Shown here one piece after another: positions 10,504-50,199 of a DNA stretch of 64,000 nucleotides. Within the stretch, counting starts at the first letter, position 1. Every line of letters starts with the position of its first letter. Where the stretch lies: positions 335,730,001-335,794,000 of the forward strand of contig NC_067398.1 in the NCBI RefSeq assembly GCF_016432865.1, written 5' to 3'. This DNA is from Antechinus flavipes (taxonomy: Eukaryota). The translations under genes and the position numbers were made by a program. The notes beneath the pieces were generated by a model. It was not told the origin of the DNA. It made no database searches and worked only from the letters and a program-made list of their open reading frames with translations.

Positions 10504-11331
10504 TTATTATTATTATTATTATAGCTTTTTATTGACAAAACATATGCATAGGTAATTTTTTCATCATTGACTCTTGCAAAAACTTCTGTTCCAACTTTTC
10601 CCCTCCTTCCCTCCACCCCCTCCCCTAGATGGCAGGTAGTACCATACATGTTAAATATGTTAAAGTATATGTTAAATACAATATATGTATACATATTTAT
10701 ACAATTGTCTTGCTATACAAGAAAAATCGGATTTAGAAATAAGGTAAAAATAACCTGGGAAGAAAAACAAAAATGCAAGCAAACAATAACAGAAAGAGTG
10801 TAAATGTTATGTTGTGGTCTACATTCATTTTCCAGTATTCTTTCGCTGGGAGTAGCTGGTTCTGTTCATTACTGATCTGATTTGGATCCTCTCATTGCTG
10901 AACAGAGTCATGTCCATCAGAATTGATATAGTATTGTTGTTGAAGTGTATAATGATCTCCTGGTTCTGCTCATTTCACTCAGCATCAGTTCATCTAAGTC
11001 TCTCCAGGCCTCTCTGTATTCATCCTGTTGGTCATTTCTTACAGAACAATAATATTCCATAACGTTCATATACCACAATTTACCCAACCATTCTCCAATT
11101 GATGGGCATCCATTCAATTTCCAGTTTCTAGCCACTACTAAAAGGGCTGCCACAAACATTTTTTGCACATGTGAGTCCCTCTCCTTTCTTTAAGATCTCT
11201 TTGGGATATGAGCCCAGTAGTAACACCACTGGATCAAAGGATATACACAGGTTGATAACTTTCTGAGTATAATTCCAAATTGCTCGCCATAATGGTTGGA
11301 TCTGTTCACAACTCCACCAACAATGCATCAG
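10504..11331 (-). mobile_element. 5'-truncated L1 insertion with TSD
   Basis: Minus-strand ORFs encode the L1 ORF2 C-terminus (WWSCEQIQPLWRAIWNY; MFVAALLVVARNWKLNGCPSIGEWL). (TTA)n tail at about 10504. 13-bp TSD tcacatggttctt (10491-10503) / tcacacggttctt (11332-11344). Confidence 0.9.
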
Positions 11332-14577: not shown

Positions 14578-17030
14578 CCATCTATCCTGATCTTCCAAGG
14601 AGCTGCATATCATAGGAAGGGATGGCAGCCTGACTGAAACTGGAAGGACCTTAGATATCACCTACACTAAATACCTCTCCTCATTTAACATATGGGGAAA
14701 CTGAGATCAAGGGAAGTTAAGTAATTTGCTCAAGTCCCTGCTGGACCCCTGCTGCCCTAAAGTAGGCACTGTGCTAAAGAATGAGTGACACCCACTAGGA
14801 GAATTACTTAGGGAGTATTCTCCTGGTAACCCTATAAAAGGACCATAGGGACTGCTGGGCCTTCATATTTCTGGTACTGCAAAGACCGGAGATAGAAGTT
14901 GAGATGGCGCTCTCTGCAAATGACAAGAATAACGTGAAGAGGATCTGGAGTAAGTGGATGGGAGGCAATGCTAGTGCTGAAGCCCTGTTGAGGTAAGGGC
15001 TCCCCTTCTTTTCCCCCTCTTTGCACTTCCTACATTCCCTAAATCCAACTCCTGTCCGGTAGACACATGGATGCCCTTAGAATCCAGACTCCCAAACACT
15101 TGCCTTCTCCGACCTGAGCCTAACAAGTCCCCTGGATCTTCTGAGCTCAGAATCCCTCCTCTCCTTCTTAGCCTGGACTGTTTCCCCCGTTTTCAACCCC
15201 TGGTCTAGTTCCAGGTGCCCAGTGGACAATGCTCGAGATGATACCCAGAATGAGTCCCTCTTTCTTCTTTCCTTCCCGCAGGACCTTCCTCTCCTTCCCC
15301 ACTACCAAGACCTACTTCTTAATCAATACGGCCCGGCTCTGTCGACGGTCAGCACCATGGTCAGAAGGTGCCCTTTCCCAGGCTGTTGCCAACCTGGATG
15401 ATCTGCGCATGACCCTGTCCAAACAGAGCTTCAAGCTGAAAATGGATCCTGTTAACTTCAAGTTGAGTCAGAGATCAAGGGACCCACCAGAGCTGGCGAA
15501 TGGGGATTCCCAGTAATGCTATATGCTAGCCACGCAGCTCCATTGAGGTGTAATGAAGATTTGGTATGGACAGATTACTGGATTCCGAGTTAGAGTGGCA
15601 TTTGACCGCGGTCAGGACGGGCGCAATGGGCGGCTGGAATACAAGACAGGTAAGGGAATGAAGCAGGCAGGGGCAGCGGGGGCAGGGAAGTGTGGGTGCC
15701 CACCTGACTCGGGAGCTGTCCCTTCTCTCCCAGCTCCTCTCTCACTGCCTGATAGTGACTCTGGCCCGTCACCTGAGCAAGGATTTGACTCACAAAGTGC
15801 ACGCCTACATGGATAATAAGTTCTTTGCCTCTGTGGCTGCCTCTATGCGCTGATCTCAAAGTACCGTTAGGTCTTCAGAGGCAAGGAATTTCCCTCACCC
15901 TGCTGCCCCAACTGGGCTGCGGATCCCTCGGTGTCCCCATCTCCTCTTACTCCGCACAGTCTGATGGACGTCTCCGAATAAAGTCCGAGTCTGCCACAAT
16001 TTGTGTGCGTTTGTCTTTTGCGTCTGGGGCTGAGCTGCTTGTCTTTGGGGGGGTGATGGTGGTGGAAGAGGTGTTGAGAGAAAGGGAACTCTATCCTGAC
16101 TTAACCTTCATTCCACAGCCCTGAAGGGATGGAGTGGGCAGGGAAAGCCTTGCGATAGAAATTGGAGAGCACTTGCACCCAGATCAGCTTCTTTGTGTAC
16201 TCTTGCAGCCCACAAACATCCTCACCCATTTTATTTGTTCCATTCTGTTAAAATCTTGCTTGTCATCTGAGTGAACAAGATTGGGTTTTCTAAATGAGGA
16301 AATGAAAGATTTTAAAACTTGATCTGGCCGTAAGAGGAGCTCCTTCACTAGAACTCAGAAAATGCACTATTCTTCCCTTAGCCTAGTTAACACCATAATT
16401 GGCATGTTTGCACAGAGGCTTTGTTGCCTGAATATACTGTCTGATGAGATTGGAAGGAGATGATAAACTGAGAAGTGACATCACTCTTCAACTGATCTTT
16501 CAGACAGAGTGAGAGAGGTTAGCCCAATACAATCTTAGCTCATTCTGAGGACGAGCAGAGTATAACCTTGGTATGCCCTGGGCTCTCCTTAGCAACTTTG
16601 AGACATTCTATAAGGAAACCAGAGACAGGTCATTTTAGGGAGGGACATTTCAAGAGAATCTCAGATGCCTTGGGCTAGAGACAGACTATTGCCTAGATCC
16701 CTGCACTCCCCCCCTCACCCCTCCAAAGCAAAATTTTGACTTTCCCCTTTCCTTTTCTTATTCTTTTTCTTGTGTTTACTTTTGCTGGTGTTCTTTGGCT
16801 GCTTGCATTCCTCACTGAGTTTGCAATGGCATATAGAGAACTGGGGAATGGGTTGGAACCAAAAACTTGATATAAATTGAATAGTTATGTTTCTTTGCTG
16901 AAACTATGACTGGACTGAGAATGACTTTCCATCCCTACCCATAGCACTTTCCTATGGATAGAGTAGGGTGAGCTCTACCACCAAAATTGGGCTCACTCAT
17001 TTACATGCTTCATCACTTGCAATAAGCCTA
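14578..17030 (+). repeat. alpha-globin duplication unit A
   Basis: 5' flank (ctatcctgat..ctgca.atcatagga..gcagcctga) matches 19733 onward and about 27950 onward; 3' flank (ttgcctgaatata..ctgatgaga..gatgataaa..catcactcttcaactg; cactcatttac..cacttgcaataa) matches 22100-22700 and 30300-30590. Confidence 0.85.
14904..15870 (+). pseudogene. alpha-globin pseudogene A
   Basis: Exon remnants 14904-14992, 15282-15462, 15734-15870. Exon-2 donor GT>TT at 15463. Indels scramble the CD/E region, a deletion removes the proximal His (cagagcttc in place of ctgagcgacctgcacgcccat), and exon 3 is frameshifted with an early TGA. CCAAT decayed to AGAAT (14778); TATAAAA kept (14833); AATAAA at 15977. Confidence 0.95.
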
Positions 17031-20518: not shown

Positions 20519-21516
20519 ATGGTGCTCTCTGGTGCTGACAAGGCTAACGTGAAGTCCGTGTGGAGTAAGGTGGGAGGCAACGCCGGTGCCTACGCAGGTG
20601 AAGCCCTTGCCAGGTAAAGGACTCCCCTCTCCTCCCCGGCCTTCGCGCTTCCTACCTATCCCCAGTCCCATAGATCCACGAATGCAGAATCCAAAAACCC
20701 AATCCAGGTCGGCAGACCTCCGACAGAAATCCGTCGAGTGTCCCGGGATCTTCTGAGCTCAGAACCCTTCCTCTCCTTCTTAGCCTGGACCGTTTCCCCC
20801 ATCCTCAACCCTGGCTCCAGCTCCAGGTGCCCAGTGGACAGCGTTCGGGATGATGCTCCAAATGAGTCCTCTTTCTTCTTTCCTTTCCGCAGAACCTTCC
20901 TCTCCTTCCCCACTACCAAGACTTACTTTCCCCACTTCGACTTGTCCCCCGGCTCCGCCGACGTCAAGGGTCATGGTCAGAAGGTAGCTGATGCCCTTTC
21001 CCAGGCTGTTGCCAACCTGGATGATCTGCCCGGAACCCTGTCCAAACTGAGCGACCTGCACGCCCATAAGCTGAGAGTGGATCCAGTTAACTTCAAGGTG
21101 AGTCAGGGATTGAGCGACCCACCGGGGGGAAGCGAAGGGACCGGGGCTGGTGACTGGATGCCCAGTGCAGCCAGTAAGGTCGCTTTTGAGTGTAATGGTT
21201 CCTACAATGAACCCTTGGCATGCGGGGCAGATTACTGGATTTCAGGGTAGAGCAGGGTTTGAGCGCGGTCAGGACGGGGGCAGCGGGCGGGTGGAGTACG
21301 AGACAGGTAAGGGAAGGAAGCAGGCAGGGGCAGTGGGGGGAGGGAAGTGTGGGCGCTCACCTGACTCGGGAGCTGTCCCTTTTTCAGCTCCTCTCTCACT
21401 GCCTGATCGTGACTCTGGCCTGTCATCTGAGCAAGGATTTGACTCCCGAAGCCCACGCCTCCATGGACAAGTTCTTTGCCTCTGTGGCTACCGTGCTGAC
21501 CTCCAAGTACCGTTAA
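20519..21516 (+). CDS. HBA: adult alpha-globin, intact, 142 aa
   Basis: Exons 20519-20613, 20893-21097, 21388-21516 (95/205/129 nt, GT-AG). [142 protein letters not shown]. His58 and His87 present; AATAAA at 21626. Confidence 0.98.
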
Positions 21517-27330: not shown

Positions 27331-30300
27331 GGTAATTATCCAATAGGGATGTCAATTTCTTCATCTGTATAGGAAGGGGTTGGATTCAATGATTTCTGAG
27401 CTGCCTTTCAGCTCTAAGTCTATGATGTTATGGACCCCAGGATAGCTCCTTGCAGTACAACTTTCATCCTCAGCACAGCTATTTCAGGAATGGTGGGGCT
27501 GGAGAGGAGAGCGCTTCCCTGCCCAGGTGCCTCTCAGCTGGTCAGGATGCTTCTTAGGGAGGTCAGGGAAAGGAACCTCCAACTTGACTGCTGCAATGAC
27601 TGTGACTTGTGAGTGAGTCAGAATGTGTGACTGGGCTGTCCTTGATCTTCTTCTATATGTGTTTGAGCCTCATGGCATTCCTAAAGGATAGTTTGTTCAG
27701 ATGACAAAGTGACTCAGTGGTAGAGAAGGAACTGTCCTGTCTCCTGCACTTCGGGACAGAAAACCCCAGGGTTTGTCCTCATTTGCCTCCCAGGTTACTA
27801 GTGTGAGCATAAAGAAAGACCCCTCAGTGTGAATGTGGGCCAGGACCAGACATTCCTATACAAATGTTGCACTGATCTGGGTTCCCTTCCCCTTTCCCTC
27901 CTCTGTCTTTAAATCTGTAGCATCTGAGTATGGAACCGTCTGATTCTTCTGTCCTGATTTGTTAGGGAGCTGCACATCATAGGATGAGGGTGGCAGCCTG
28001 AGTGAGAGCTGGAAAGGACTTTGGATGTCACCTACACCAATTGCTTCTCCTCAGTTTTCAGATGGGGAAACTGAGATCCAGAATGTTAAGTAATTTTTTT
28101 CCCATAAAGTATTAATTGAGAGATCCAGGTGATTTGTACCCAGGTCCCTTATTTCAATCGACATCATTTCAAAGCCCCCATTCTGCTTCCCAAAAGGTAG
28201 GAGAGGAATGTAATGGAAAACTGCAGGTGAATGGGATTGATTATTTACTTTTGATTTTACTCATTTATTATTATTATATTTAATAATTTGATTTTAATAA
28301 TATATTATATTTATGATCATTATTTACTTATTGATTATTTAATTTATTATTTGATTATTTACAAACCTAATATGTGCCATACTGCGCTCAACTTTTTTTC
28401 AATTATTATCTCTTTTGATGTTCACAGCCCTGAATAGTAGGTGCTATTTTACCCCTATTTTACAGACGAGGAAACTGAGAAAAACAGAGGTGAGGTGACT
28501 TGTCCAAGTTCACACAGCTAGGAAGATTCTGGGGCCATATTTGAACTCAGGTCACCCTGTCTCCGGTTCTCGTACTTGGGATTGCCCCAACCTGAGTGCA
28601 AAGGAGAAAAGTCCCAGACGTAGAGCCTGCGCAGAGCCTCTTCTGCAGTCGGGGAGCCCGAGATAGACGGGAGCACAGCGCCCCCCGGAGGGGGTGCACA
28701 AACGCGACACCGTCTGGGTCTGTCACTCAGCTGGGCCCCTGGCACCCTAAAACAGGTACTGTGCCAACCAATGAGCGACGCCCACCGCGGAGCCACCCCG
28801 AAGCGTGGCTGTGAGGCTTGGGACGGTGTATTTCTGGTCCCGAGAGAGCCCAGAAGGAAGCCAAGAGGGCGCCCTCTGCGAATGACAAGACCAAGGTGAA
28901 GGCCGTGTGGAGCAAGGTGGGGGGTCAACGCCGGTGCCTAGGCAGGTGAAGCCCTCACGAGATAAGGGGCCGCCTCCTCGCCTCGCTTCCTCACCTCCTA
29001 CCCTGCCTGTACCCGGTCCCCAGGCCTAGAGACTCACGGGGGCCCTGCGGCATCTAGTGACCTACTCCAGGTCCAGAAGCTTCAATACCTGCCTTCCCCA
29101 GCCTGGGCCCATCGAGTGTCCCGGGACCTTCTGTGCTCAGAATCCCTCCTCTCCTTCTTAGCCTTTCTTCTTTCCTTCCCGCAGGACCTTCCTTCTCCTT
29201 CCCCACTACCAGGACCTTCTTCTTAATGAATACGGCCCCGGCTCTGACGACATTCAGCACCATGGTCAGAAGGTGCCCTTTCCCAGGCTGTTGCCAACCT
29301 GGATGATCTGCCCGGGACCCTGTCCAAACTGAGCGACCCGCACGCCATAAGCTCAGAGTGGATCCAGTTAACTTCAAGGTGAGTCAGGGATCGAGCGACC
29401 CACCGGGGGGGGGGGGGGGGGAGGAAGCTGAGGGACCGGGGCTGGTGACTGGATGCCCAGTGCAGCCAGTAAGGCCGCTTCTTTGAGTGTAATGGTTCTT
29501 ACAAGGAACCCTTGGCATGCGGGGCAGATTACTGGATTTCAGGATAGAGCAGGGTTTGAGCGCGGTCAGGACGGGCGCAGTGGGCGGGTGGAGTACGAGA
29601 CAGGTAAGGGAAGGAAGCAGGCAGGGGCAGTGGGGGGAGGGAAGTGTGGGCGCCCACCTGACTCGGGAGCTGTCCCTTTTTCAGCTCCTCTCTCACTGCC
29701 TGATCGTGACTCTGGCCTGTCACCAAGGACTTGACTCCCGACCTCGAAGTACCGTTAAGTTGAGAAGCCAGAGATTTCCACTGCCTGCCGCCATCATCCG
29801 GGCTGCGGGCCCCTCGGTGTCCCCAATCCCTTCCATCCTGCTGGCGCAGATGGGACGTCTCCGAATAAAGTCTAAGCCTGCCACCGCTTGACTGTGTGCG
29901 TTTTTCTCCTGAATCTGGGGCTGGGATGCAGAGGTGGAGGAGGTGTGAAGAGCTACAGGGAACCCGTCCTGAAACATGGTTCCTTCCACACCCCTGAAGA
30001 GATGGAGGTGGGTAGAGAAGGCCTTGCAGCAGAATTGCGAAATCACCTGCACCAAAACAGCCTCCTGAGGTTTCCTGCCCTACCCCCTGCCCCTTTTGCA
30101 GACCCTCTCAAGCATCCTCACTTCTACTCCATTTTGTTTTTTATATGTGTTATAGGCAACGACTGTGATCTCTGTGTAGTAAGTTTGGGTTCTCTAAGGT
30201 CTTGCTCTGGAAGGAACTCCCTCAGGAGAACTGAGAAAGTTCAGTGTACCCACTTTATTCTACTTGTTTCCTTAATTTAAGTGTTTGCACAGAGACCTTG

Positions 30301-30590
30301 TTGCCTGAATATATTCTGATGAGACTGGAAGATGATAAAGTGAGAAGTGACATCACTCTTCAACTGCTTTTTCAGACAGGGAATGAGAGAGGCCAGTCCA
30401 GCACAACCCTTAGGTTCAACTCACTGTGGCAGTTGCAGCAGGGAAAGAATAAGATCATTGATACACCCTATGGTCTTGCCAAAAACCTTGAGATATTCCA
30501 TAGGAAAACCTCTGGGATGGGATGTGGCAGGGGAAAAGGCATTTCGGAGAAGAGGGGCACTCAGGTTAGAGTCAGATGCATTGGATCTAG
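27331..30590 (+). repeat. alpha-globin duplication unit C
   Basis: Collinear with unit B from 18566, but lacks the 545-bp LTR and has an AT-rich expansion at about 28236-28360. Confidence 0.9.
28866..29758 (+). pseudogene. alpha-globin pseudogene C
   Basis: Start ATG>AGG (28866). +1 frameshift in exon 1. Exon-1 donor GT>AT (28962). Exon 2 (29185-29378) has multiple indels. Exon 3 (29685-29758) has a large internal deletion. A deletion of about 24 bp removes the TATA box, while CCAAT (28768) and AATAAA (29864) remain. Confidence 0.95.
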
Positions 30591-32289
30591 AGTCAACTTC
30601 TTGCTTATTTCACTATCTGTACCTCTCTTTCCTCTCGTCCCCACCCAAGGAAGGGAATTACAACTGCTAAGTCAATGGTCTTTTCTCCTTTCTTCACCTC
30701 AACATCTGTGCAGCATTTGAAACTTTCAACCATTCTCTCTTCCAGATGTTCTGTCTGGTTCTCCTCCTATCTGAATGGTCTTCCTCAGGTTCCTTGGCTA
30801 GTTTTTCAGTCAAAAACCTGCCTTCTAAATCTTCTGTCCAGAGTCCAAAACTCTGTCTCATGATCTCTTCTCTTCTCTAGCCACACTCTAACTGGGTGCC
30901 TTCTGGAGTTCAATGAGTTTAATTATAATCTCTATTCAGGTGACTCACACCCCTATAGAGCCAACTCTAGTCTCTCTCCTGAGCTCTATTCTCAAATCTA
31001 ATAAAACTTTTCAACATTTTAAACGGAATGTAAATAAATGATATATGATAAATAAGCAAATGAATATATTCTCATGGATTTCTCAAATTTGACATATACA
31101 AAACAAAACTCATTATCTTCCCCTCCTGCTAAATCACCCCTTTTTGAAAATTCTATATTTTAGTCATATAACAACACCATCTTTCCAGTCTTCCAAATTC
31201 ACAGTGTTATCTTCAGCTCCTCACTCAGGTTCCAAATGTCAGCATTTCTATCTCCACAGCATCTCTTGTGTCCATGTCCTTATCAGTCCTCACCAGAAGG
31301 AACAATGATAAAGAATATCAAAGAAAGATTGACCAATTTTTAAAAAAAGAATTAGAAACAAAGTTGAAGAATTACTAAACAAATTGTAGTATGTGACTAT
31401 AATGGAAACAAAAATAATATTTTGGTTGAAGCATTTCAAGAACATTCAAGAAATATTTGTTTGAAAAGTTAATTTATTAAAGTCTATTTAGGGTAGGGGT
31501 TGGCATGGCCCCAAGAATATAGCTGTGTGTTTTCAGTTCCACCAATTTTCTACCCTTTTCACTTCTATGTTACTAGGGACAGGGATATACCTCTTGCAAT
31601 AGTTTTCTGAACCCCACACTAGCAACTTAAGATTCTTGGGGCCCACCCTCATTTATTCTATTTTTTTGATGAACAAGAAAGATAAAAATAAGAGATACAA
31701 TATCAATACCTTCATAAAGGTAGAGGTCCAAAGGTGTTAAATTTTGCACATATTTTTGGTTTTATTCAATGTATTGTTAGTTGTACTAATTTTTTCATCT
31801 TTTTTTCTGTCTTAAAAATACTATTACATAGGATGGCTCTTTGAGAAGGAGAGGGAGAAGGATACTGGGGAAAACTATGGTGATATAAAAAACACTAAAA
31901 AAATATTTATTTTAGGGGAAAAGAGCCAGGCCAGCTACAACTTCCTCCTCAGGATTCTTGGGTTACCCTAAGGTAACTCTTCTCCATTTGCTCAATTCTC
32001 CATTGTTTATAGTTCTTCTACTTAAAAAAAACACACATCCATCTGTATTAGTTACTACAATTAGTTACAAGTGCTCTCACTGCCCCAGCCAGGCCTGCGC
32101 CCCACTCAGGGGCAGCAATCCCCAGTCTCAGACTCTTAGGAAGGATCTTGGCCCAGGAGGAAGGATAGACAATGGGATGAAGGTCCCAGCAGGTACGGCA
32201 CTCTCCTCTGCCCAAGATGCTTGGGCCAGGGAGGCTGAGACAAATTTGAAACTGGGGGATACTGAAAAAGCTAGGGCCCAAGAATAAGC

Positions 32290-33180
32290 AATCATGGCTA
32301 AGAAGACAGGGAAAGATAACGATAAATGTTGGAGGGTTGTACAAAAACTGGGACACTAATACATTGTTGGTGGAGTTGTAGACTGATCCAAATATTCTAG
32401 AGTTTGGAACTATGCCTAAAGGGCTATCAAACTATGTATATCCTTTGATCTGGCAATGTCAGGTCTGTTTCCCAAAGAGATTATTAAAAAGAAAAAAGGA
32501 CCTACATGTGCAAAAATATCCATAGCAGCTCTTTTTTGTAGTGGCAAGAAACTGGAAACTGAATGGATGCCCATGAGTTGGGGAATGATGAATAAGTTAT
32601 GAATGCAATTGAATATCATTGTTCTATAAAAAATTATCAGATAAATAAATTAGAGGAACATAGGATAGTTTATAAAAAATTATCAGCAGACTGATTTCAG
32701 AAAGTCTGGAGGGACTTACATGAACTGATGCTAAAGAGATCATTGTACACAGCAACAAGAAGATTATACGATGATCAACTGTGATGGATCTGGCTCTTCA
32801 ACAATGAGGTGATGCAGGGCAATTCCAATAGACTTGTGATGGAGAGAGCCATCTGCATCCAGAAAGAGAGGTCTATGGGGACTAAATGTGGATCACATCA
32901 TTAGTTTTTTCACCTTTTATGTTGTTGTTTGCTTTTTTTTTTCTTTCTCATTTTTCCCCTTTTGATCTGATTTTTTTGTATAGCATGATGAATATGGAAA
33001 TATGTTTGGAAGAAATGCACATCTTTAACCTATATCAGATTACTTGATGTCTAGAGAAGAAAGGAAGGAAGAAGGGAGGGAGAAAAATTTGGAACACAAG
33101 GTTTTGTGAGAGTGAATGTTGAAAACTATCTTTACCTATATTTGGAAAAATAAAAAGCTATTATTATTTTTTAAAAGAGA
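32290..33180 (+). mobile_element. L1 3' fragment
   Basis: ORF2 C-terminal-like (acattgttggtggagttgta..gcagctctttt..gtggcaagaaactggaaact) followed by 3' UTR and A-rich tail. Confidence 0.8.
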
Positions 33181-34479
33181 ATAGCCAATCATTCAGATTT
33201 GAATGCAGAGGTTGGGAGGTGAACACAGTAGTGAGGATTGAACCAGTTACTAACTTTTACTTTTGTTTGGCCCAGGAATCAATAATAAAAGCCCTAGGGT
33301 TTTGAGGTCCAGAATGAAGAGCTAGAAGATTGGTACCTATCACAAGGGTGTCGTAGGCTGGGGGGGTTTGAAGATAAGACATTGCCACAGCAGAAATGGA
33401 GAGCATGAAGCTGCTGGTATCTTCAGAGTTTTGACAGGTCACAAAACTGATAAAGGAACAATAGGCAGCAATCCAGACACAGCACTTCAACATGAGGTCT
33501 TAAGGGCTGAGGATCATTCCCAGAAGGTTTAACTAGTCCAAGTGGGATATTCCAGAGTCGGGATGTTCTCTGTGGCTGGTGACTTGTACCTGGGATCACA
33601 AAGGTGACATCTCAAAGCCCAGGGAGCAGAATCAACAAATAGACATTTTTGGAATCACTTTCCTTTCCTAAATCTCTAAGCACAGGGAACAAGTTGTGAA
33701 GGAGGCTTTCCCAACCTGGGATGTATAAAAGCCAGAATCAGTAAGCTCAGAAAATCAAGCCAAGAAAAACAGCTTTTCAACACAGGATCTTCAAGTGCAG
33801 GGAAGACACATAATCAACTTGTCTAACTCCGATCTTTCAATGCAGGCTGAGGAGTCTAGGGAAATAATTTTCCCTCATAGGATCTCTAAGTGCAGGTTGC
33901 AGTTATGGAGTATCTGGAAATCTCTGAGTCTGAGGGGCAGAGGCAGGGCTGGTTTTTCACCTGAGCATCTTGTTAGGACAAAGATAGACATACTATTTGA
34001 GGACATTGCCTGGCGGAGTCTATCTACTTTTCCATTCCAGGATCTAGTACTCTAGATATAATTTACCACTTAACATCAATGAACTTTTACCAAGTGATAC
34101 TGGCTTGAAAGATTTTAGTAAAAAACAAAAGGACAAACATTTCATTTAACAAGCAAATGAGAGGAGCAGGGAAGTGAATATCTTTTATAACAACAGAGAA
34201 GGGAGAAATACTTTTACCAAAGAAGCTTCTAGAGAGGTTCATAGGAAATAAAATGAACAGTTTTGATCTGATAAAAATTGAAAAAAAATTTGCAAGTAAA
34301 ATTATAAGGAAAATAGTCAACTGGGTATTTCCCAGTTTCCCAATTTTTCCCAAATTTCCCCAAAATGTATCTGATTATGGCCTGCTATCCAAGATATACA
34401 GGGAATTAATACAAGTGTATAAGAACAAGAGTCATTCCTCAATGGTAATTGAACAAAGGATCTAAACAGACCATTTTAT

Positions 34480-35280
34480 TTTTCTTTTCTTCTCAACAGT
34501 ATTTTATTTTTCCAAATACATGTAAAGATAGTTATTAATATTCATTTTTGTAAGGTTTTGGGTTCCAAATTTTTTCCTCTCTCCTTTACATCTCCTTCCC
34601 CAAGGCAAAAAGTAATCTGATATATAAGTTGTGTATTTACAATCATTTTAAATGTATTTCCATATTAGTTGTGCTATGAAAGAAAAATCAGAACAAAAGT
34701 GAAAAACCTTGAAAAAGAAAAAGAAAACAACAACAACAAAAGGTGAAAATGGTATGCTTTGATCGACATTCAGTCTCCATAGTTCTCCCTCTGGATGTGG
34801 ATGGCATTTTCCATCCCAAGTCTATTGGAATTGTCTTGAATCACTATGCTGCTAAGAAGAGCTAAGTCTATCCTAGTTGATTTATCACATAATCTTGCTG
34901 TTGTGTTCAGTGTTTTCCTGGTTCTCCTCATTTCACTCAGTATCAGATCATGGAAGTCTTTCCAGGCTTTTCTGGTCAACCTGCTCATCATATCTTATAG
35001 AATAATAATATTCCATTACATTCATATGTCATAACTTATCCAGTCATTCCCCAATTGATGGGCATGCACTCAATTTCCAATTCCTTGCCATTACAAAAAA
35101 AACCACTACAAACATTTTTTGTACATGTGAGTCTTTTTGCCTCTATTATGATCTTTTTGAGATACAGACTCAGTAGTGACACTGCTAGATTAAAAGGCAT
35201 GCACAATTTGTTAGCCCTTTGGGCATAGTTCCAGATTGCTCTCCAGAATAATTGGATAAGTTCACAATGGTCTAAAATAG
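34480..35280 (-). mobile_element. L1 3' fragment
   Basis: Minus-strand ORF 34770-34991 (RKAWKDFHDLILSEMRRTRKTL) matches the other L1 3' copies. Confidence 0.8.
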
Positions 35281-35589
35281 ACCATTTTCAAAAGAAGAAA
35301 GACAAGATAAACAATCATCAATATATGAAAATATTCCAAAGCATTAATAATAAGGAAAATAAAATATGACTTTCTACCTCCCAGCTTTCCAATTGGGAAA
35401 GATTGACTAAAAAAGGATAGGGTAATGACAATTGTAGGAGGAATTGTGGAAGAACTAACAAACTAAAGTACTCTTGATGGGGTTGTGAAGTACTCCAACC
35501 ATTCTGGAAAGTAATTTGGAATTATATCCCAAAAGTCACATTCTTTGAATCCCATTTTTTCTATTATCTTTCCCAATTAGAAGACTGGG

Positions 35590-36480
35590 AGGTTCACCTT
35601 CATTAAAAAAAAAAAAAAAAAAACAACCTAATTTGATCTTTCCATATCCAATAGATACATTTCAAATCTCTCCTATCTTTTGTGACTAAACTCCCTGAGA
35701 AATCCATTTACAGTGATACATATCTCCACCTCCTTTTCTTCACTCTTGTCTCAATTCTTTACAATCTGTTTCTGACTTTCTTTTGCAACATTTAATAGAT
35801 ACTTCTCTATCCAAAACTAGTGATCTCTTATTGCCAAATCTAATAGCTTTTTTCAATATTTATCTTTCTTGAACTTGGATATGTTCAATTTAAGAGGTTT
35901 ATAAGACATCCAGTTTGACAGTCTGCATTACTAAGATTGATCCTGTCAATCACCCTCTTCTCCTTGGTATTCTCTTCTCTTTAGGTTTTCCTAGACAGAA
36001 TATTATTTTATCTTCACAATTCTCCTACCTACCTGATAATTCCTCCTTTGTCTCTTTTGCTAGGTATAAAAAAAGGGTATTCCTTTGGTAGGCATTTATT
36101 CAGATAATTTTGTTAATACTCCATATCCCACATATCTATTCTGGGTTCTCCTTTCTTTTCTCTCTTTATTATTTCATTTGATGTTTTCATCAGCCCCAAT
36201 TAATTTAATTGTTATCACTATGCTGATGATTCGCAGATCAACTTATTCAGCCGTCATCTCTCTCCTAATTCAAAATTCCCTTTTTCGACTGCCTATTGAA
36301 CATCTCAGATTGGATGTCCTGAAAATATCTTAAAGTCAAGATATATAAACCCTAATTCTTTATCTTTTTTCTCAATCTCTCCCATGTGCTAAAATTCCTT
36401 AGTGCTGTCAAGAGCACCACCACCTCAGTAAACCAGCTTTCAAGATAGATGTCTCACGGACCTTTTAAACTCACATCCAA
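35590..36480 (+). mobile_element. L2 relic
   Basis: Degenerate L2 RT-like sequence (gatcctgtcaatcaccctcttctcctt..; tatgctgatgattcgcagatc = YADDSQI). Confidence 0.65.
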
Positions 36481-36828
36481 AATGAAATCTATAATTGAAT
36501 GGATGCCCATCAGTTGCAGAACGGCTGAATAAGTTATGACATATTAATGCAACAAAATGTTACTATTTTACAAGAAATGATCAGCAAACTGATTTCAGAA
36601 AAGCCTGATGCTGAGTCAAATGAGCAGAACCAGGAGAACATTGAAACAGTTACAGCAAGATTATGTGATTATCAACTGTGATGGACTTGGCTCTGCTCCA
36701 CAATGCAATGCGATTCAAGAGAAGTCCAATAAACTTGTGATGGAAAGAACCATCCATATCCAGAGAACTATGAAAATTGAATGTGATTCAAAGCATAGTA
36801 TTTTCACCATTTTTGTTTGTTTATTTTT

Positions 36829-37380
36829 CTGGGCCCAATCAAAACCTATAAATCACAAACTAAGAGTAGAACCCATCATAAACTTGGACTATTGAGGCAA
36901 GTAAAAGAGGGTAAAAGGGAAAAATAAGGGACCTGAGAGTGAGGGTGGATTCTCCAGGGCAGCAGTAATATATGAATTATATGAAGTGCTCATTGCAGAA
37001 TGAGAAGTTTGAATATAGGAAATGATAGAGTTCTTGCTCAATGGAAGCATTTCATGAAAAAATTCTAAAGCAGAAGAATCAGATGAAATGGGCTAACATA
37101 TGTACCTATCATGGTCCAACCTCAGTTTCCTTTCTTTTCCCAATATCTGGCATAATCTGTGACTGTAGTATTGACCAATCAGCTCCTTGAGGAGTTCTTT
37201 GTGGTGTACCCCTTCATGGACCCATTCCTGTGCAATTTGATCTCTGTGTTCATCTCTAAATACTGTCCAACTAGTATCCCCTTCAGTAATTACACCCCAT
37301 CCCTTGGGCCTCTAAACCCCTCCTCCCTTCCTACCTGCTGCATAATCAGAGGCAATTATCTTAGAATAAAGTCTGAGTGC
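36829..37380 (+). pseudogene. highly decayed alpha-like globin relic (3' end of exon 2, intron 2, exon 3, 3' UTR)
   Basis: 36854-36886 translates HKLRVEPIINL (cf. [10 protein letters not shown]). 37144-37266 translates YLA*SVTVVLTNQLLEEFFVVYPFMDPFLCNLISVFISKYC (cf. [42 protein letters not shown], one-codon gap), preceded by a pyrimidine tract and CAA (mutated CAG acceptor). aataaagtctgagtg at 37365-37379 matches the alpha-globin polyA signature (aataaagtctaagtc at 21626). Confidence 0.75.
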
Positions 37381-38789
37381 ATGGCAACCTGGCTATGCAA
37401 ACCCCTGCTCTGTGATGGGGGAGTGGGGCATTAGGGCCATAGAGGAAGCACCATAAGGTCACTGTGTTCCATTTTCCTAAGTCATTGACAGGCTCATGTC
37501 CAGAGGACAGATTGACAGAAATGGGAGAGGCCGGAAGCCCAGCCCAGTCCTTTGCCGCCTGTAATATCTCCCAAGTAACCCCACCCACACATGACTTAGG
37601 AGATACTTCCAGATACTAGATATTTCTACACTATCACTCCCTGGGGGGTGGGCCTAGCTAGGTGGGGAAGTTAGGGTGACAAAGTCAAAACTCCCAAGGA
37701 GCTCCAAGTGTAGGGCCCTCACATCCTCTTGGCTCTTTTGCATGTTTATGTTCTATATTCTCTTCCAAAACAACCTTTTTGCCAGAGTGCATTTTGGGAG
37801 TGGGAAAAAGGATTCTCTCAGATGTCTGTGTGCATGCAGCCCAACTTGGTAAACCCCCCACATCGGGTTCATGATAGTTGGCCATCCCTAGAACAAAGGA
37901 GGAAGATATCTAATATGTTGGTTAGAGACAGAACTCTCAGATTGGTGAAAGTTGGGAGGGTTTGTAATGAAACTTTATAAAACTGGCTGGTCCACCAAAG
38001 GCCTACCTGTTGGAAGATTGTTGATCCATCCTCCACACTTCCCCAGATATTTCTAAACTGGGAGTCAGAAGATGTCCCTCTATCATTATATCACTACATG
38101 ACCTTGAATTAGTTACTTCTGTTGGGGGAACCTCTGTTTCTCCTTCTTATAAAATGAGAAGGTTCAATATGATAAGGTCCCTTCCATCTCTGACATTACA
38201 GATTGCATGTTCCTTTCCAGATCTACTACTCTCTATTCTAAGGCCCCTTCTATATATTATAGCAGCATGGTAAAATGGCAAGAGAAGTTGGAATAAGAAG
38301 GTGTTAGTCCCTGCTCAAGTACTTATTAATCATGTGACCATGGGCATATCTTTTAATGTCTCTGAAATACAATTTCTGCATCAACATAAAGAAAATAATA
38401 ATGCCTGTCCTAAACAAAGCTTATATCCATTGACTGCAGATTAGCTAAATAAATTATAGTGTATGAATGTAATAAAATGTTGCTGTTCTGTAAAAAACAA
38501 CAAATAGGGATATGATGAATAAAGAAAAGCATGAGAGGACTCAAGTAAATTGATACAAAATAAAGTTAAGCGGACCCAGAAAAACAATATAAACAATGAC
38601 CACAGCAATATAAATGGAAAACAACAACAAAACAATCAAAATGGAATGTTATAAAATTACATTGACCAGGCCTGATCCCAAAGAATGCATCTCATTTTTT
38701 TTGTTGCAGAAATATGAAATTATGGAACACTGCATATAACAACATATATTGATTAGTTTTGCTGGTCCAGCAGGAGTTGAGAGCAAAGA

Positions 38790-39200
38790 CCAAAGCACTG
38801 TCTCTGTCTTTGTCTCGCGTTCTGTCTACCTGTCTGTCTATAACTCTGCTCTCTTTGTGTCTCTCTCCCTTCTCACCTTTGTTTCTCTGTCTCTCTCTCT
38901 CTCCCCCACTCCCCATCTCTTTATCCCTCTCTCTCTCTGTTTCTCTGTCCCTACCTCTCTGTCTCTGTCTCTCTTGTTCTCTCTCTTCTGTCTCTCCACT
39001 ACTATCTGAGGAATGGTATAGAAAAGGGAATGGGATGGAACAGGTTATATGGAATGAAGTAGAATAATAGGAGATAATAATGGTGTTGGGGAAGAGAAAT
39101 GAATTTTATGGAGATGGGATTGGAAAAGATGGGGACAAGGATAGAATGGTTTGTAACAGGCATAGAATAGGATGGGATTGAAATACAATGGGGATACAAA
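38790..39200. repeat. CT-rich tract followed by a degenerate (GGAAT/GGGAT)-like purine-rich tract
   Basis: Direct reading: pyrimidine-rich about 38790-39000, then purine-rich about 39010-39200. Confidence 0.75.
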
Positions 39201-39997
39201 TTGATACAAATTGAGAAGGAACAATCAATCAGTCAGTTAACAAGCATTTATTAAGTGCCTACAATGTGACAGATATTGTGCTAAACCTTGGGGATAAAAA
39301 GGCAAAAACAAGCCCTGATCTCAAGAAGCTCACAATATATTAGGAAAGACAGCATGCAAACAACTATGGACAAACAAGATACATACAGTATAGGTAGAAG
39401 GTAATATCAGAGGGAAAATACTAGCATTAAGGGGGACTGGAAAATGAGCAGAAAAGATTTTCACTGATGAAGAAAGAAAGCATTTCAGGCCTGGGGTACA
39501 AAGTTGGGAGCTGGACTGTCCTCTGTGAGAGACAGTAAGGAAACCAATGTCAGGAGCAGGAGGGAGGAAAGTCAAGATGGGTCATTTCTAGAACAGAAAG
39601 AAGCAAACTTCTGTCCACATTTAGTAGAGTATTGGAGTTGGAGTCAAAGATTTTAACTTATCATACTCTTACTAGCTGTGTGACTCTTGGTAGGCACTTA
39701 AATGGTCTACCCCGGTTTTCTCCTCTGTAAAAATGAGAATAATAATAAAAACATCGTGTTATTATTATAAAGAGAAAAAAAATAATAATAACAGCATTCA
39801 CCTCCCAGGGTTATTATGAGGATCAACTGGTTTTTGCAGAACTTTAAGCGCTATATAAATACTAATTATCATCACTATTACTATTGTTGGTGTTACTACA
39901 GTTCCACAAGCTGAGGTAAGGGATGTGAGACAATCCACAGGTTAGGTATTCGGGCGGATGCTGCGTTTGCACAGGTGATCTGGCCCAGGTGCGGATG

Positions 39998-40069
39998 CAG
40001 CGCCCCCTGTGGGGGAGACCCGGCCTCGCCCCACCTGGGCTAGTGACTGCATGATCCGTGCCAGCCAAT
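39998..40069 (+). promoter_or_regulatory. theta-globin promoter (CTCF-like motif, CCAAT, no TATA)
   Basis: cagcgccccctgtgggg 39998-40014 (minus strand CCCACAGGGGGCGCTG), CCAAT 40065-40069, GC/CpG-rich; no AT-rich box before the ATG at 40148. Confidence 0.65.
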
Positions 40070-40147
40070 GAGCTCCACCTCCCCAGTGCCAAGTCTAGGA
40101 CATGCCATCCTTGGCGAACCCCGAACAGACAGACCTGGGAAAGAAGG

Positions 40148-40994
40148 ATGGCCCTGTCCCCGGCAGACAAGTGCAACGTGAGAGAATTCTGGGAAAAACT
40201 GGGTGAGAACACCAAGGTGTACGGCACTGAAGCCCTGGTGAGGTGAGGCAACACCCAGCACGTGAATGCGCCACTTCCCCGAGCCCAGAACCCGGCGTGG
40301 CCCCGCTCTCGGCCGGTTCCCGGGACCCCTCCTCTCTCCCGCTCCCCAGCCTTGGGACCCCAGGCCGCGTTCTCGCGTCCCGCCGCCGCCTCTCGGCAGC
40401 CGCTGGCGATCCCTCGCTCCCTGGCCGGCTCTCCCTTCTTTGCCCCACTCCCGGGTCCGGGCCTCCCTCAGCCTGCCCTCCTTTTGGTTGGCAGGACCTT
40501 TCTTTGTTTCCCCGAAACCAAGACCTACTTCCCCCACTTTGATCTCTCCGGGGGCTCCCGCCAGGTTCAGGCTCATGGCAAGAAGGTGGCAGACGCCCTG
40601 ACTTTGGCCGTCAGCCACCTGGATGACTTGCCAGCCTCCCTGTCGTCCCTGAGCGATCTCCACGCCCACAGACTCAAGGTGGATCCCATCAACTTCAAAG
40701 TGAGTGGAAACCCGGGGGGGTGGGAGGCAAGAGGGGGTCTAGGGAGTTGGGCCAGCGAAGAGAGAGAGAGGTTCGGTCCAGAATTCGGGGCTAGTGACGT
40801 CTGAGAACTGGGCCCCCCCAAGATCCGACCCGGTCTGATCCCGCACCCGCCTCTTCTCTCCCCAGCTCCTGTCTCACTGTTTGCTCGTGACCCTGGCGAG
40901 GCACCATCCAGGCAACTTGAACCCCGAGGTGCACGCTTCTCTGGACAAGTTCCTGAGCTCCGTGTCCTCCGTGCTAACGTCCAAGTACCGTTAA
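40148..40994 (+). CDS. HBQ1: theta-globin, intact ORF, 142 aa
   Basis: Exons 40148-40242, 40495-40699, 40866-40994 (95/205/129 nt, GT-AG). [142 protein letters not shown]. Called theta from divergent exon 1 and its position 3' of the alpha genes. AATAAA at 41047. Confidence 0.88.
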
Positions 40995-43264
40995 GCTGGG
41001 AGGGTCAGCCGCTCCCTCCGCCAGTTGTAATACACGGGAAACTTTAAATAAAGGCGAAATCTATGGCAATCTAGCTGTGTGCACTGGGGCTTGAGTCGGG
41101 GAGCTGGGGAGCCTCGGTGTTCAAAACTGCAGCCCCTTCCCCGGCTCTAGAGAAAGCTGAGCTGTCTGCAGTGACTACCCCGTGATCCTGACATAGGGGA
41201 GAAGTCTCTGAGAGGGCTGAAGGGCTGCCGTATGTCCCACCCTATTGCTTCCCCTCCTTCCCAACCTGAGAGAGTACAAAACCCCCTCCCAGCAACTTTC
41301 CTATCTTGGTTTATCATTGTTTCAATTTTTATTCATATATTTTGCTTTTCCATTATAATCATTTCTGAATATAATTCCACCCACCCACCCCAGTCACTCC
41401 TTGTAAACAAACAAACGAAAAGAAAAAACAATTCAATGAACATCAACAACCATAGTTCGTTCCCCCACACTCACTCATCCCCACAAAGAGAGGGAGATGT
41501 ATTTTCTCATCATTTTCCCAAATGTAGCATTCAGTTCAAATTTGCATTTTTCACCATTTGCATTGCTAGAACCATTATGTACATATAGTTTTTTTGCAGC
41601 CTCAGAACCCAAAATCTCCACTCAACACCCCCTCTCAATCTCCCTCTCTATCTTCACTCTTATTAGGACAATGTACTTTTGAACCCAAACCTGAGAAGAC
41701 AGTCTTGTCTACAGACTCCAGTAACCTTTCCTATCCCTCCAGAAATTGGGGTTTCTGGGTGGCCAGTAAGTTTTATGGCCACCATTGAAACCCTAGCCAG
41801 GCCCAAGAGGGCCTGGGTTTGAGAATAAGACCTTGGAAGATTAATCAACCTACTGCATCTGGATGAGTTCAAGAGTTTGGGCCCTGGTTGAGCAGAGTTT
41901 ATGGGCCCAGCCCCAGGAAAGAGTTATCCCCAACAACCAGCCTGAGTCTGGCTCAAGATTAGGAGGCATGTGGTCACACCTCTGCCTTTGTCTCACTAAC
42001 TCAACTCTACCTTATCCTTCAACACTTCCCTCCCCTCTCTTATCACACTATCACAGACCCCTAATCAACTTCTAAACCCATTTTGGGTCCAGAGCTCAAG
42101 GTCACTATTCTCCCTAGACCTAGTGCCCCCTGACTCCCACAGATCCTAAAATCCTGCCCTCATTTCCCTCCTGAAACGACCCTGATTCCTCCTTAATGCC
42201 CAATGTCCTGAGGACCACTCCTGAATTTCTATCCTCACATCCCACCCAGAATGCCATGACCTGAGTTCAGATCCTGCCTCTGACATAATACCTTTGTGAC
42301 CTTGAGCAAATCTATGGACCTCAGTTTTCTCATTTGTAAAGCATAAGAGTTGAACTAGATAATCTCTAAGTTTCGTTCCAATTCTGAGTTTAAGACCCCA
42401 AGGTCTTTGTGGCCCAGTACCTCTATGTTACCTGACTGTGACAGCAGGGGTAAATGTCTGAGATCTGACAAAGGTATCACCTTCTGATAACTTTTATGTG
42501 CTAAAGATCCCAGAAGGGAAAGACAGCTTTTGTCTTCTCTTTCCATCAGCGCAGTCCAGGGACTGCCTCTCACCTACTTCAGAATGATCTGAAAGAATCT
42601 GACAGGTCTGAGGAATGACAGGGTTTGTTTTTTTTTTGGGGGGGGGAGAAGTTAATTAACACCTGCAAATATATCTAAACCCAAAAATATTTATAGTAGT
42701 ACTTTTTGTATGTGACAGCAAAGAAATGGTAACAAAGTAGATACCCATTGTTTGGGGAGTAGTTAAATAAATTGTAGTGTATTAATATAATGAAATAATA
42801 TTGTACTGCAAGAAATAAGGTGTGTAATGAATACAGAGACATATGGGAAGATCTACACATGAACATAATGCAGGATGAAGAAAACAGAACCAAGAAATAA
42901 TATGTACCCTAAATACAAGAATAAAAATGTGAAGAACCACAAGAGAATAATTTATGCACTACTTCTATCACAGGGGCATTATGAGAAAAGCACATTGTGT
43001 AGTCTAGAGCATTCTAGAAATATACGCTGTTCTTATTTCTAGTTCATTGGTATTCATTTTCTGTTCTCTGGTATTTCCTCAGTTCAAGTGTTCGTTTTTT
43101 TCTTATTGCAATACTTCAAGGATTGATCATTTCAATTGAGTGAGGTCAATATGGGTATCCATTCATTTGTTTAGTAGATTCATATGCACTGCTTTAAGCT
43201 GGGGTATGGAAATCTAAAATGTCCTATTTCTTTAATCCAGAGGCATAACTGGGGATATTTTCAC

Positions 43265-43441: not shown

Positions 43442-43987
43442 NNNNNNNNNNNNNNNNNNNNNNNNNNNNNNNNNNNNNNNNNNNNNNNNNNNNNNNNNNN
43501 NNNNNNNNNNNNNNNNNNNNNNNNNNNNNNNNNNNNNNNNNNNNNNNNNNNNNNNNNNNNNNNNNNNNNNNNNNNNNNNNNNNNNNNNNNNNNNNNNNNN
43601 NNNNNNNNNNNNNNNNNNNNNNNNNNNNNNNNNNNNNNNNNNNNNNNNNNNNNNNNNNNNNNNNNNNNNNNNNNNNNNNNNNNNNNNNNNNNNNNNNNNN
43701 NNNNNNNNNNNNNNNNNNNNNNNNNNNNNNNNNNNNNNNNNNNNNNNNNNNNNNNNNNNNNNNNNNNNNNNNNNNNNNNNNNNNNNNNNNNNNNNNNNNN
43801 NNNNNNNNNNNNNNNNNNNNNNNNNNNNNNNNNNNNNNNNNNNNNNNNNNNNNNNNNNNNNNNNNNNNNNNNNNNNNNNNNNNNNNNNNNNNNNNNNNNN
43901 NNNNNNNNNNNNNNNNNNNNNNNNNNNNNNNNNNNNNNNNNNNNNNNNNNNNNNNNNNNNNNNNNNNNNNNNNNNNNNNNNNNNNNN
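43442..43987. other. assembly gap (546 N)
   Basis: Run of N. Confidence 1.
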
Positions 43988-49177: not shown

Positions 49178-50199
49178 ATGGTGAACTGGACAGCAGAAGA
49201 GAAACAGGCCATTTCTAGCATCTGGGCCAAAATTGACATCGAGGAAGTGGGGGCCGGTGCTCTTAGCAGGTGGGAGAAGAGACTCGGGCTGTTGCCCGGC
49301 TTGGGGCTAAACTGGGTTAGGCTGGGGTCATGAATGCTTTCTCTGCTAACCAAAAAGGTCGGGAGGTAGGGAACTGAGGGGATATTGGCTAAAGGCCTTG
49401 TATGAACTGGCCTGGAAAAACCCTTGGCTGACCATCCTCTCTCTCTCTCTGGTTTCCAGGCTGTTAGTTGTCTATCCCTGGACCCAGAGGTACTTCAGCA
49501 ACTTTGGGAACCTGTCCAGCCCACGAGCCATTGAGGGGAATCCCCGGGTCAGGAATCATGGCAAGAAGGTGCTGACCTCATTTGGGGAGGCTGTGAAGAA
49601 CCTGGACAATGTGAAGCCACCTTTGACAAGCTGAGCGAGCTGCACTCAGACAAGCTGCACGTGGACCCCCAGAACTTCAGGGTGAGTGCCCTTGTACTTC
49701 CCCCAAGTTTGGGGGACAAGCCCTACAGATTCTAAAAATGTGGAAGGTCCTTGGCTGGGCATTTTTGAATTTCTCCAAAGACAGGGAGCTCCCTCCTTCT
49801 CCATAATGGCTTCAAGTATTTAAAAAGAGATCCTCTCTCCTTCCCTTTTCCAACCTCACCTTGTCTCTGAGCTAACAATCCCCCCTCCCTCAGGGACCTC
49901 GAAACAGAGACCCCCTTCTACTCCCTGGGAATGTTGCTTTTCCTAAAATGTTACTACTGACCCAGCTTCAGGTTCCCCTAGGGGCCCAATGCACTTCCCC
50001 AGACTTGCAGCCATTCTCCCACTGTACAGAGACTGCCCAGACCTGATCCTCTGTCCTCTCTTCCTTCCAGCTCCTTGGAGACAACCTGATCATTGTCCTG
50101 GCAGCCACCATGGGCAAGGACTTCACTCCCGAGGCCCAAGCTGCCTGGCAGAAGCTGGTGGGAGTGGTGGCCTCCGCCCTGAGCAGAAAATACCACTGA
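49178..50199 (+). CDS. HBW: omega-globin (beta-like chain in the alpha cluster); 1-bp deletion frameshift in exon 2 as assembled
   Basis: Exons 49178-49269, 49460-49681 (222 nt, expected 223), 50071-50199. [51 protein letters not shown]...[20 protein letters not shown]/[A][63 protein letters not shown]. As written, the frame hits TGA at 49632-49634. AATAAA at 50275. Confidence 0.92.

What the first reader, a model, noticed from the sequence alone, without database searches (positions are those of the whole stretch)
36829..37380. Hidden fourth alpha-like globin relic buried among LINE fragments
Three independent, collinear signals lie in the right order and spacing between pseudo-alpha C and theta. 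(1) An exon-2 tail translating HKLRVEPIINL (36854-36886). (2) About 260 bp later, a pyrimidine tract, a dead acceptor (CAA), and a 41-codon exon-3 equivalent ending SKYC with MD.FL in register (37144-37266). (3) The alpha-type polyA signature aataaagtctgagtg (37365-37379). It is far more decayed than pseudogenes A and C, and I see none of their triplicated flanks. It may record an older alpha/theta-lineage duplication whose 5' half was displaced by L1/L2 insertions. Gene predictors would probably miss it.
Basis: partly seen in the sequence, partly recalled or inferred. Interest (0 to 1): 0.8.

Follow-up and report, generated by a model that had tools for sequence, protein, structure and literature searches.

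The report
Decayed alpha-globin gene fragment before theta
Between the last adult alpha-globin copy and theta-globin of this marsupial cluster lies the dead, very decayed 3' end of one more alpha/theta-type globin gene, which is real but an ordinary kind of genomic fossil.

Summary
The window is a dasyurid-type marsupial alpha-globin cluster: zeta, alphaD, psi-alpha A, intact alpha B, psi-alpha C, theta, omega. A DNA profile of exon 3 plus 3'UTR, built only from the live and pseudo alpha/theta genes, hits window 37137-37421 at E about 1e-7 (23-25 bits). The next noise hit has E about 10, and 4.9 Mb of shuffled controls never exceed 5.7 bits. The match runs in codon register from the acceptor tract through exon 3, an alpha-length 3'UTR and AATAAA, and about 50 nt beyond. 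Protein-level tests fail (no Pfam hit, tblastn E 1.7). The exon-2 tail (36854-36886) is noise-level alone but credible in context (z 3.8 against theta exon 2; chance of such a hit there 0.003-0.015). No exon 1, exon-2 body, promoter or triplicated flank is detectable. The relic abuts an L1 piece that has itself lost its 3' end, which points to a deletion rather than displacement by insertions. The Tasmanian devil has the same relic at the same junction, diverging at the same rate as its flanks, so it evolves neutrally. It is a truncated, intron-containing pseudogene of the adult alpha/theta clade, older than the A/B/C triplication. It is real and apparently unannotated, but of a known kind.

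The parts
36493..36830 (+). L1 fragment (end of ORF2 plus start of 3'UTR), truncated at both ends; context, forms the 5' boundary of the relic
   Evidence: Matches at least 12 other L1 copies in the window, and all matches stop at 36817-36830. Other copies continue about 250 nt further and align with each other there. 36831-37130 does not match that tail (z about 0-2.5).
36854..36886 (+). Probable exon-2 tail relic (equivalent to codons 89-99, [11 protein letters not shown]), with a 3-nt insertion
   Evidence: Translation. tblastn E 2.2 and nhmmer exon-2 profile positions 193-221 at E 8.9. 19/25 nt identity to theta exon 2, z 3.8, 1/500 shuffles. Conditional chance 0.003-0.015. Identical in the devil (33/33).
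36887..37136 (+). Spacer in the position of intron 2 (about 257 nt to the exon-3 start, against 290 in alpha B and 166 in theta); no detectable homology
   Evidence: Profile alignments do not extend into it. There are no repeat matches in 106 kb of window, devil and Dromiciops sequence.
37137..37143 (+). Remnant of the intron-2 acceptor: end of the pyrimidine tract plus CAA in place of CAG
   Evidence: The whole-gene nhmmer alignment starts here, with profile 'ttcccag' aligned to window TTCCCAA.
37144..37269 (+). Exon-3 relic: 41 codons in register, in-frame TAA at 37153-37155, one 3-nt deletion after 37200, terminal Arg codon now TGT, stop codon position now CCA (37267-37269)
   Evidence: 55-58% nt identity to alpha/theta, against 46-50% to alphaD, zeta and omega. 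The devil copy is slightly closer to alpha (tblastn E 0.041).
37270..37364 (+). 3'UTR relic of alpha-type length (95 nt before AATAAA; about 110 in alpha B, 53 in theta)
   Evidence: Aligned along the alpha 3'UTR with several indels.
37365..37370 (+). AATAAA polyadenylation signal in the alpha-type context GAATAAAGTCT(G/A)AGT
37371..37421 (+). Homology continuing past the poly(A) signal; the TGGCAACCTGGCTATG stretch resembles the theta downstream sequence
   Evidence: alignment to profile position 1307.

Best explanation
This is the 3' remnant of an unprocessed (intron-containing) globin pseudogene of the adult alpha/theta clade. It lies in the cluster's own orientation, 2.8 kb upstream of theta. 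It keeps the last ~11 codons of exon 2, an intron-2-sized spacer with a dead acceptor, exon 3, the 3'UTR, the poly(A) signal and about 50 nt beyond. It arose by tandem DNA duplication within the cluster (inferred) and was inactivated long ago. It lost its CpG-island character and drifted to about 55-60% identity with its living relatives (shown). A deletion removed its promoter, exon 1 and most of exon 2 together with the 3' end of a neighbouring L1 (inferred from the junction). This happened before the split from the Tasmanian devil lineage, which carries the same junction (shown). It now evolves neutrally and does nothing (shown only as far as equal divergence in relic and flanks can show it).
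For: Cluster map by tblastn with the window's own alpha protein. nhmmer with profiles built without the candidate gives E 2.3e-7 and 9.3e-8 in the window and 4.5e-8 and 1.5e-7 in the devil ortholog, against a next noise hit of E 9.5. Shuffled controls reach at most 5.7 bits, against 25.1 and 23.0 observed. The alignment is in codon register from the acceptor to past AATAAA. The exon-2 tail is supported in context. The relic is closer to alpha/theta than to zeta, alphaD or omega. An ML tree places it inside the alpha/theta clade on a 0.40-0.54 subs/site branch. It has 1-2 CpG, against 12-14 in live genes, and GC 0.47 against 0.56. Identity does not favour any codon position strongly. The devil ortholog is collinear across 35266-39589. 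Substitution identity is 94.5% in the relic, the same as in the flanks. The L1 piece is truncated at 36830. No 5' gene parts or triplicated flanks were found.
Against: Protein-level searches do not recognise it as a globin (tblastn E 1.7). The exon-2 tail is only 25-33 nt and not significant on its own. Nothing shows that a complete gene ever existed here; a partial duplication would look the same. Only one other species (5.5% substitution divergence) could be compared, so neutrality and age are weakly constrained. RepeatMasker/Dfam could not be run.
Confidence: 0.88

Rival explanations
1. Partial duplication: only the 3' part of an alpha/theta gene was ever copied here (for example by unequal crossing-over with a breakpoint in exon 2), so no complete fourth gene ever existed.
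For: Homology starts abruptly near codon 89, and nothing of the 5' half or the flanks is detectable.
Against: The boundary coincides with an L1 piece that has lost about 250 nt of its own 3' end. That is what a later deletion would leave and is not expected from a duplication breakpoint.
Confidence: 0.08
2. Chance resemblance picked out by eye in AT-rich, repeat-laden DNA.
For: Each protein-level signal is at noise level (tblastn E 1.7 and 2.2; no Pfam hit; amino-acid HMM noise).
Against: The DNA profile E-values are about 1e-7, and 4.9 Mb of shuffled controls top out at 5.7 bits against 23-25 bits observed. The hit also has the correct strand, order and spacing.
Confidence: 0.01
3. Processed (retrotransposed) globin pseudogene, or a globin 3' end carried by a transposon.
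For: It lies next to L1 sequence and ends with a poly(A) signal.
Against: A 257-nt spacer and an aligned acceptor remnant separate the exon-2 tail from exon 3. Homology continues about 50 nt past AATAAA with no A-tail. The stretch is single-copy in 106 kb, whereas the L1 pieces are multi-copy.
Confidence: 0.01
4. A still-functional element: for example an alternative 3' exon or terminator, or a regulatory element upstream of theta.
For: Exon 3 keeps its reading frame apart from one 3-nt deletion. The exon-2 tail and exon 3 show 158/162 identity with the devil, against 94.5% overall.
Against: The excess identity is not significant (4 mismatches against about 9 expected). There is an in-frame TAA, a CAA acceptor, a lost stop codon and CpG depletion. 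No protein homologue was found for the 91-aa ORF.
Confidence: 0.02

Closest known systems
Pseudo-alpha genes A (14904-15838) and C (28875-29750) of the same cluster, i.e. the psi-alpha3 and alpha1 positions of the therian model zeta-zeta'-alphaD-alpha3-alpha2-alpha1-theta (PMC2529266)
   Same: Unprocessed adult-alpha-type pseudogenes in the cluster's orientation, with the alpha-type 3'UTR and the GAATAAAGTCT context.
   Different: A and C keep all three exons and share about 2.4 kb duplicated units at 67-81% identity with the intact alpha B unit and each other. The relic keeps only the 3' third, has 55-60% identity and no shared flanks, and occupies a position not in the published seven-gene model.
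Marsupial theta-globin (window 40148-40991; devil protein P0002)
   Same: Same clade in the tree. It gives the best match for the exon-2 tail and for the sequence just past the poly(A) signal.
   Different: Theta is intact, has the HHPGNLN segment and a short 3'UTR. The relic is alpha-like in that segment and has an alpha-length 3'UTR. The sister grouping has only 44-64% support.
Highly diverged, late-recognised pseudogenes of eutherian alpha clusters, such as human psi-alpha1, and the 'previously undetected pseudogene' of Hardison et al. 1986 (cited in PMC2529266; my own knowledge beyond the citation)
   Same: Decayed tandem duplicates that escaped early annotation and record birth-and-death turnover in the cluster.
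   Different: Those retain the full three-exon layout. This one is 5'-truncated and lies between alpha1 and theta.

Membership tests
Adult alpha/theta-clade globin gene (as an unprocessed pseudogene) | Significant sequence homology to alpha/theta exon 3 and 3'UTR | tested here: met
   nhmmer E 2.3e-7 and 9.3e-8. Shuffled controls reach at most 5.7 bits, against 23-25 bits observed.
Adult alpha/theta-clade globin gene (as an unprocessed pseudogene) | Closer to alpha/theta than to zeta, alphaD or beta-like omega | tested here: met
   Exon-3 identity is 0.55-0.58, against 0.46-0.50 for the others. The ML tree places it inside the alpha/theta clade, but with weak support of 51-67%.
Adult alpha/theta-clade globin gene (as an unprocessed pseudogene) | Globin exon-intron layout: intron 2 between codons 99 and 100 | tested here: met
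   The acceptor remnant aligns with the profile at 37137-37143. The exon-2 tail ends 257 nt upstream. This rests partly on the weak exon-2 tail.
Adult alpha/theta-clade globin gene (as an unprocessed pseudogene) | Position and orientation inside the alpha cluster | tested here: met
   It lies on the + strand between psi-alpha C and theta.
Functional globin gene | Recognisable globin domain, open frame, intact splice sites, exons 1-2 and promoter | tested here: not met
   There is no Pfam PF00042 hit, whereas control exon-3 peptides score 24 bits. There is a TAA at 37153, a CAA acceptor and a lost stop codon. No 5' parts were found.
Theta-globin lineage specifically | Theta-diagnostic HHPGNLN segment and short 3'UTR | tested here: not met
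   The relic reads alpha-like (CTC..GAGGAGTTC) there and has a 95-nt UTR. The tree is unresolved.
Processed pseudogene / retrocopy | No introns, and an A-tail directly after the poly(A) site | tested here: not met
   An intron-sized spacer and an acceptor remnant are present. Homology continues past AATAAA and there is no A-run.
Interspersed repeat (L1 or other) | Multiple copies, or a match to the L1 3' tail | tested here: not met
   36831-38410 has no second copy in 106 kb. It does not match the L1 tail. A Dfam search was not possible.

The most novel reading that the evidence does not exclude
The relic is not a dasyurid oddity but the remains of a fourth adult-type alpha copy that stood next to theta in the ancestral marsupial, or even therian, cluster. 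It could be the parent copy of the duplication that produced theta. Its 3' end sits about 2.8 kb before the theta start codon (my measurement in this window). From memory, alpha1 lies about 3 kb before theta in human; that figure was not checked here. If so, the published seven-gene ancestral model would need an eighth member.
Probability: 0.15. Interest if true: 0.5.

Novelty: new member of a known kind. Interest (0 to 1): 0.3.

Why it matters
Globin clusters are the textbook case of gene birth and death. The accepted marsupial layout (zeta-zeta'-alphaD-alpha3-alpha2-alpha1-theta-omega; PMC2529266) has nothing between alpha1 and theta. A verified relic there adds one duplication and one deletion to that history. 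It also gives a neutral, very old marker for dating the alpha/theta split if it is found in other marsupial orders. Finally, it shows that DNA-profile searches recover fossils that protein searches and gene predictors miss. It has no functional consequence that I can see.

Tried and rejected
1. L1 3'UTR origin of HKLRVEPIINL. MAFFT forced a plausible-looking alignment, but local alignment against six L1 tails and their consensus was at shuffle level. Rejected.
2. A true exon-2 relic upstream of the L1 piece at 35762-35962. tblastn gave E 4.7 in the window and 0.49 in the devil ('IDPVNHPLL'). The DNA-level test gave z about 0 and no nhmmer hit. Rejected as chance.
3. Protein-level detection by Pfam, an exon-3 amino-acid HMM from 136 alpha/theta globins, and a search with the 91-aa ORF. 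All were negative.
4. Homology of the relic's flanks to the triplicated alpha flanks or to theta's flank. None was found. A weak match between 36028-36271 and 30766-30985 (E 1e-4) is unexplained and was not recovered by the flank profile.
5. Orthologous intervals from other marsupials. The genes are on record for tammar, wombat, sugar glider, Gracilinanus, Trichosurus, Monodelphis and bilby, but no DNA could be served. The Dromiciops locus fetched (L002) turned out to be the alpha1-type gene, and its flank stops at the equivalent of about 34.6 kb. The Dromiciops theta isoform was not on record.
6. nhmmer on a 300-nt target returned nothing for technical reasons; it was replaced by Smith-Waterman with shuffles.
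7. Literature. I found no mention of a relic between alpha1 and theta in the open papers searched. The key subscription papers (Cooper et al. 2005, 2006) were not read.

Full report
**Setting.** tblastn with the window's own intact alpha protein maps a marsupial alpha-globin cluster, all on the + strand.

| Gene | Window coordinates |
|---|---|
| zeta-like | 3507-5308 |
| alphaD-like | 8850-9566 |
| pseudo-alpha A | 14904-15838 |
| intact alpha B | 20519-21516 |
| pseudo-alpha C | 28875-29750 |
| theta | 40148-40991 |
| beta-like omega | 49181-50193 |

The closest public theta protein is that of the Tasmanian devil, at 97% over exon 2. The devil locus L001 is collinear with window 31950-41998. 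Substitution identity is 94.5% across 35266-39589. The window therefore comes from a dasyurid-like marsupial close to, but not identical with, that devil assembly.

**Is the observation there?** Yes.
- 36854-36886 translates to HKLRVEPIINL.
- 37144-37266 translates to 41 codons with one TAA and ends SKYC.
- AATAAAGTCTGAGTG lies at 37365-37379.

**Is it more than chance? Protein level: no.**
- tblastn finds both pieces without guidance, but only at E 2.2 and 1.7, among about twenty equally weak hits in the window.
- Pfam Globin does not see the exon-3 peptide, whereas the alpha B and theta exon-3 peptides score 24 bits.
- An exon-3 amino-acid HMM built from 136 alpha/theta globins scores it in the noise.

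**Is it more than chance? DNA level: clearly yes.**
- I built a DNA profile of exon 3 through the poly(A) signal plus 45-50 nt, from alpha A, B and C, theta, devil theta and a Dromiciops alpha. The candidate was not included.
- nhmmer with this profile hits 37172-37397 at E 2.3e-7 (25.1 bits) and the devil ortholog at E 4.5e-8. The next non-globin hit has E 9.5.
- A whole-gene profile hits 37137-37421 at E 9.3e-8.
- In 2.3 Mb of dinucleotide-shuffled copies of the neighbourhood and 2.6 Mb of block-shuffled window, including the reversed window, the best scores were 4.4-5.7 bits for the first profile and 1.7-3.5 bits for the second.
- The alignment is in codon register. It begins at the acceptor (profile ttcccag, window TTCCCAA) and runs through exon 3 with a single 3-nt gap. 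It passes the old Arg-stop (CGT TAA in the live genes, TGT CCA here).
- It then continues through a 3'UTR of alpha-type length with several indels and reaches GAATAAAGTCTGAGT. It goes on about 50 nt further, where it resembles theta's downstream sequence.

**The exon-2 tail.**
- On its own it is noise: nhmmer exon-2 profile positions 193-221, E 8.9.
- In context it is credible. It lies on the right strand, 257 nt before the exon-3 start (intron 2 is 290 nt in alpha B and 166 nt in theta), and it matches the very end of exon 2.
- In shuffled sequence, hits of at least this score occur at about 3e-5 per strand-nucleotide, or 5-8e-6 if restricted to the end of the profile. That gives 0.003-0.015 expected in a 500-nt interval.
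- Against theta exon 2 it shows 19/25 identities, including third codon positions (z 3.8, 1 of 500 shuffles).
- I treat it as probable, not proven.

**What bounds it.**
- 36493-36830 is an L1 fragment (end of ORF2 and start of the 3'UTR) that matches many other copies in the window. Every match stops at 36817-36830.
- Other copies continue about 250 nt further and align with each other there. The sequence after 36830 does not match that tail.
- So an L1 piece that has lost its own 3' end is joined, within about 24 nt, to a globin gene that has lost everything upstream of about codon 89.
- No exon 1, exon-2 body or promoter, and none of the roughly 2.4-kb triplicated alpha units, is detectable between 30 and 36.8 kb or around the relic.
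- The simplest reading is one deletion that removed the L1 tail together with the gene's 5' half. This is inferred, not shown. A partial duplication cannot be excluded.
- The devil has the same junction, so the event predates that split.

**Nature of the gene.**
- The intron-sized spacer, the acceptor remnant and the continuation of homology past AATAAA without an A-tail argue against a retrocopy.
- 36831-38410 is single-copy in 106 kb of window, devil and Dromiciops sequence, while the neighbouring L1 pieces are multi-copy.
- Exon-3 identity is 0.55-0.58 to the alphas and theta, 0.50 to zeta and 0.46-0.48 to alphaD and omega.
- ML trees (K2P+G4) place the relic inside the alpha/theta clade on a long branch of 0.40-0.54 substitutions per site. 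It is nominally sister to theta, but with only 44-64% support.
- In the segment where marsupial thetas read HHPGNLN, the relic is alpha-like. It also keeps the long alpha-type 3'UTR that theta lacks.
- Alpha-side or theta-side origin is therefore unresolved.

**State and age.**
- The relic has 1-2 CpG against 12-14 in the live genes, and GC 0.47 against 0.56. Its identity to alpha is not concentrated at any codon position. This is the pattern of long neutral decay.
- Relic and flanks differ from the devil by the same 5.5%, so there is no sign of constraint.
- With at least 0.6 substitutions per site to alpha, it is roughly an order of magnitude older than the devil split. For comparison, the distance is about 0.3 among the A/B/C units (73-75% identity) and 0.057 to the devil. 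The relic is also older than the triplication.
- Faster decay of a former CpG island and alignment bias make any date soft.

**Comparison with what is known.** The published therian and marsupial model has zeta, zeta', alphaD, alpha3, alpha2, alpha1, theta and, in marsupials, omega. It has nothing between alpha1 and theta (PMC2529266). I found no report of such a relic in the open literature searched, but I could not read the subscription papers on the tammar and dunnart clusters. In kind it is an ordinary truncated unprocessed pseudogene, so I class it as a new member of a known kind.

**Limits.** Only one other species could be compared. Seven other marsupial theta loci are on record, but their DNA could not be served. 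The Dromiciops locus fetched ends before the relevant interval. RepeatMasker/Dfam was not available.

Noticed in passing
window 49611-49620: Omega-globin exon 2 lacks one G relative to the Tasmanian devil (GTGAAGGCC in the devil, GTGAA-GCC here), in an otherwise nearly identical exon. This shifts the frame; it is either a real 1-bp deletion or an assembly error.
   Followed up: partly
window 15280-15465 and 29183-29378: Pseudo-alpha A and pseudo-alpha C share the same lesions in exon 2: a 7-nt deletion after GAAGGT and a scrambled TAAT stretch replacing the FPHFDL codons (alignment). They therefore descend from one already-dead copy, or were homogenised by gene conversion, on either side of the single intact alpha B.
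   Followed up: no
window 35762-35962 (devil L001 4293-4352): Two collinear tblastn hits look like the second half of exon 2 at the protein level (for example ITKIDPVNHPLL). They have no DNA-level support (z about 0), so they are probably chance.
   Followed up: yes
window 36028-36271 vs 30766-30985: There is a weak same-strand similarity (nhmmer E 1e-4) between unique sequence upstream of the L1 piece and the distal 3' flank of pseudo-alpha C. A flank profile did not recover it, and it remains unexplained.
   Followed up: partly
L002 (Dromiciops) 10001-11247 and flank: This gene is annotated 'alpha-like' and was fetched while looking for theta. It is positionally the last adult alpha: its 3' flank aligns with window 30101-34215, interrupted by about 5.7 kb of extra sequence in Dromiciops.
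   Followed up: partly
window 43442-43987: An N run is embedded in a CT/GA-rich simple repeat (translating as SLSLS / RERER) that also occurs at 38798-39000.
   Followed up: no
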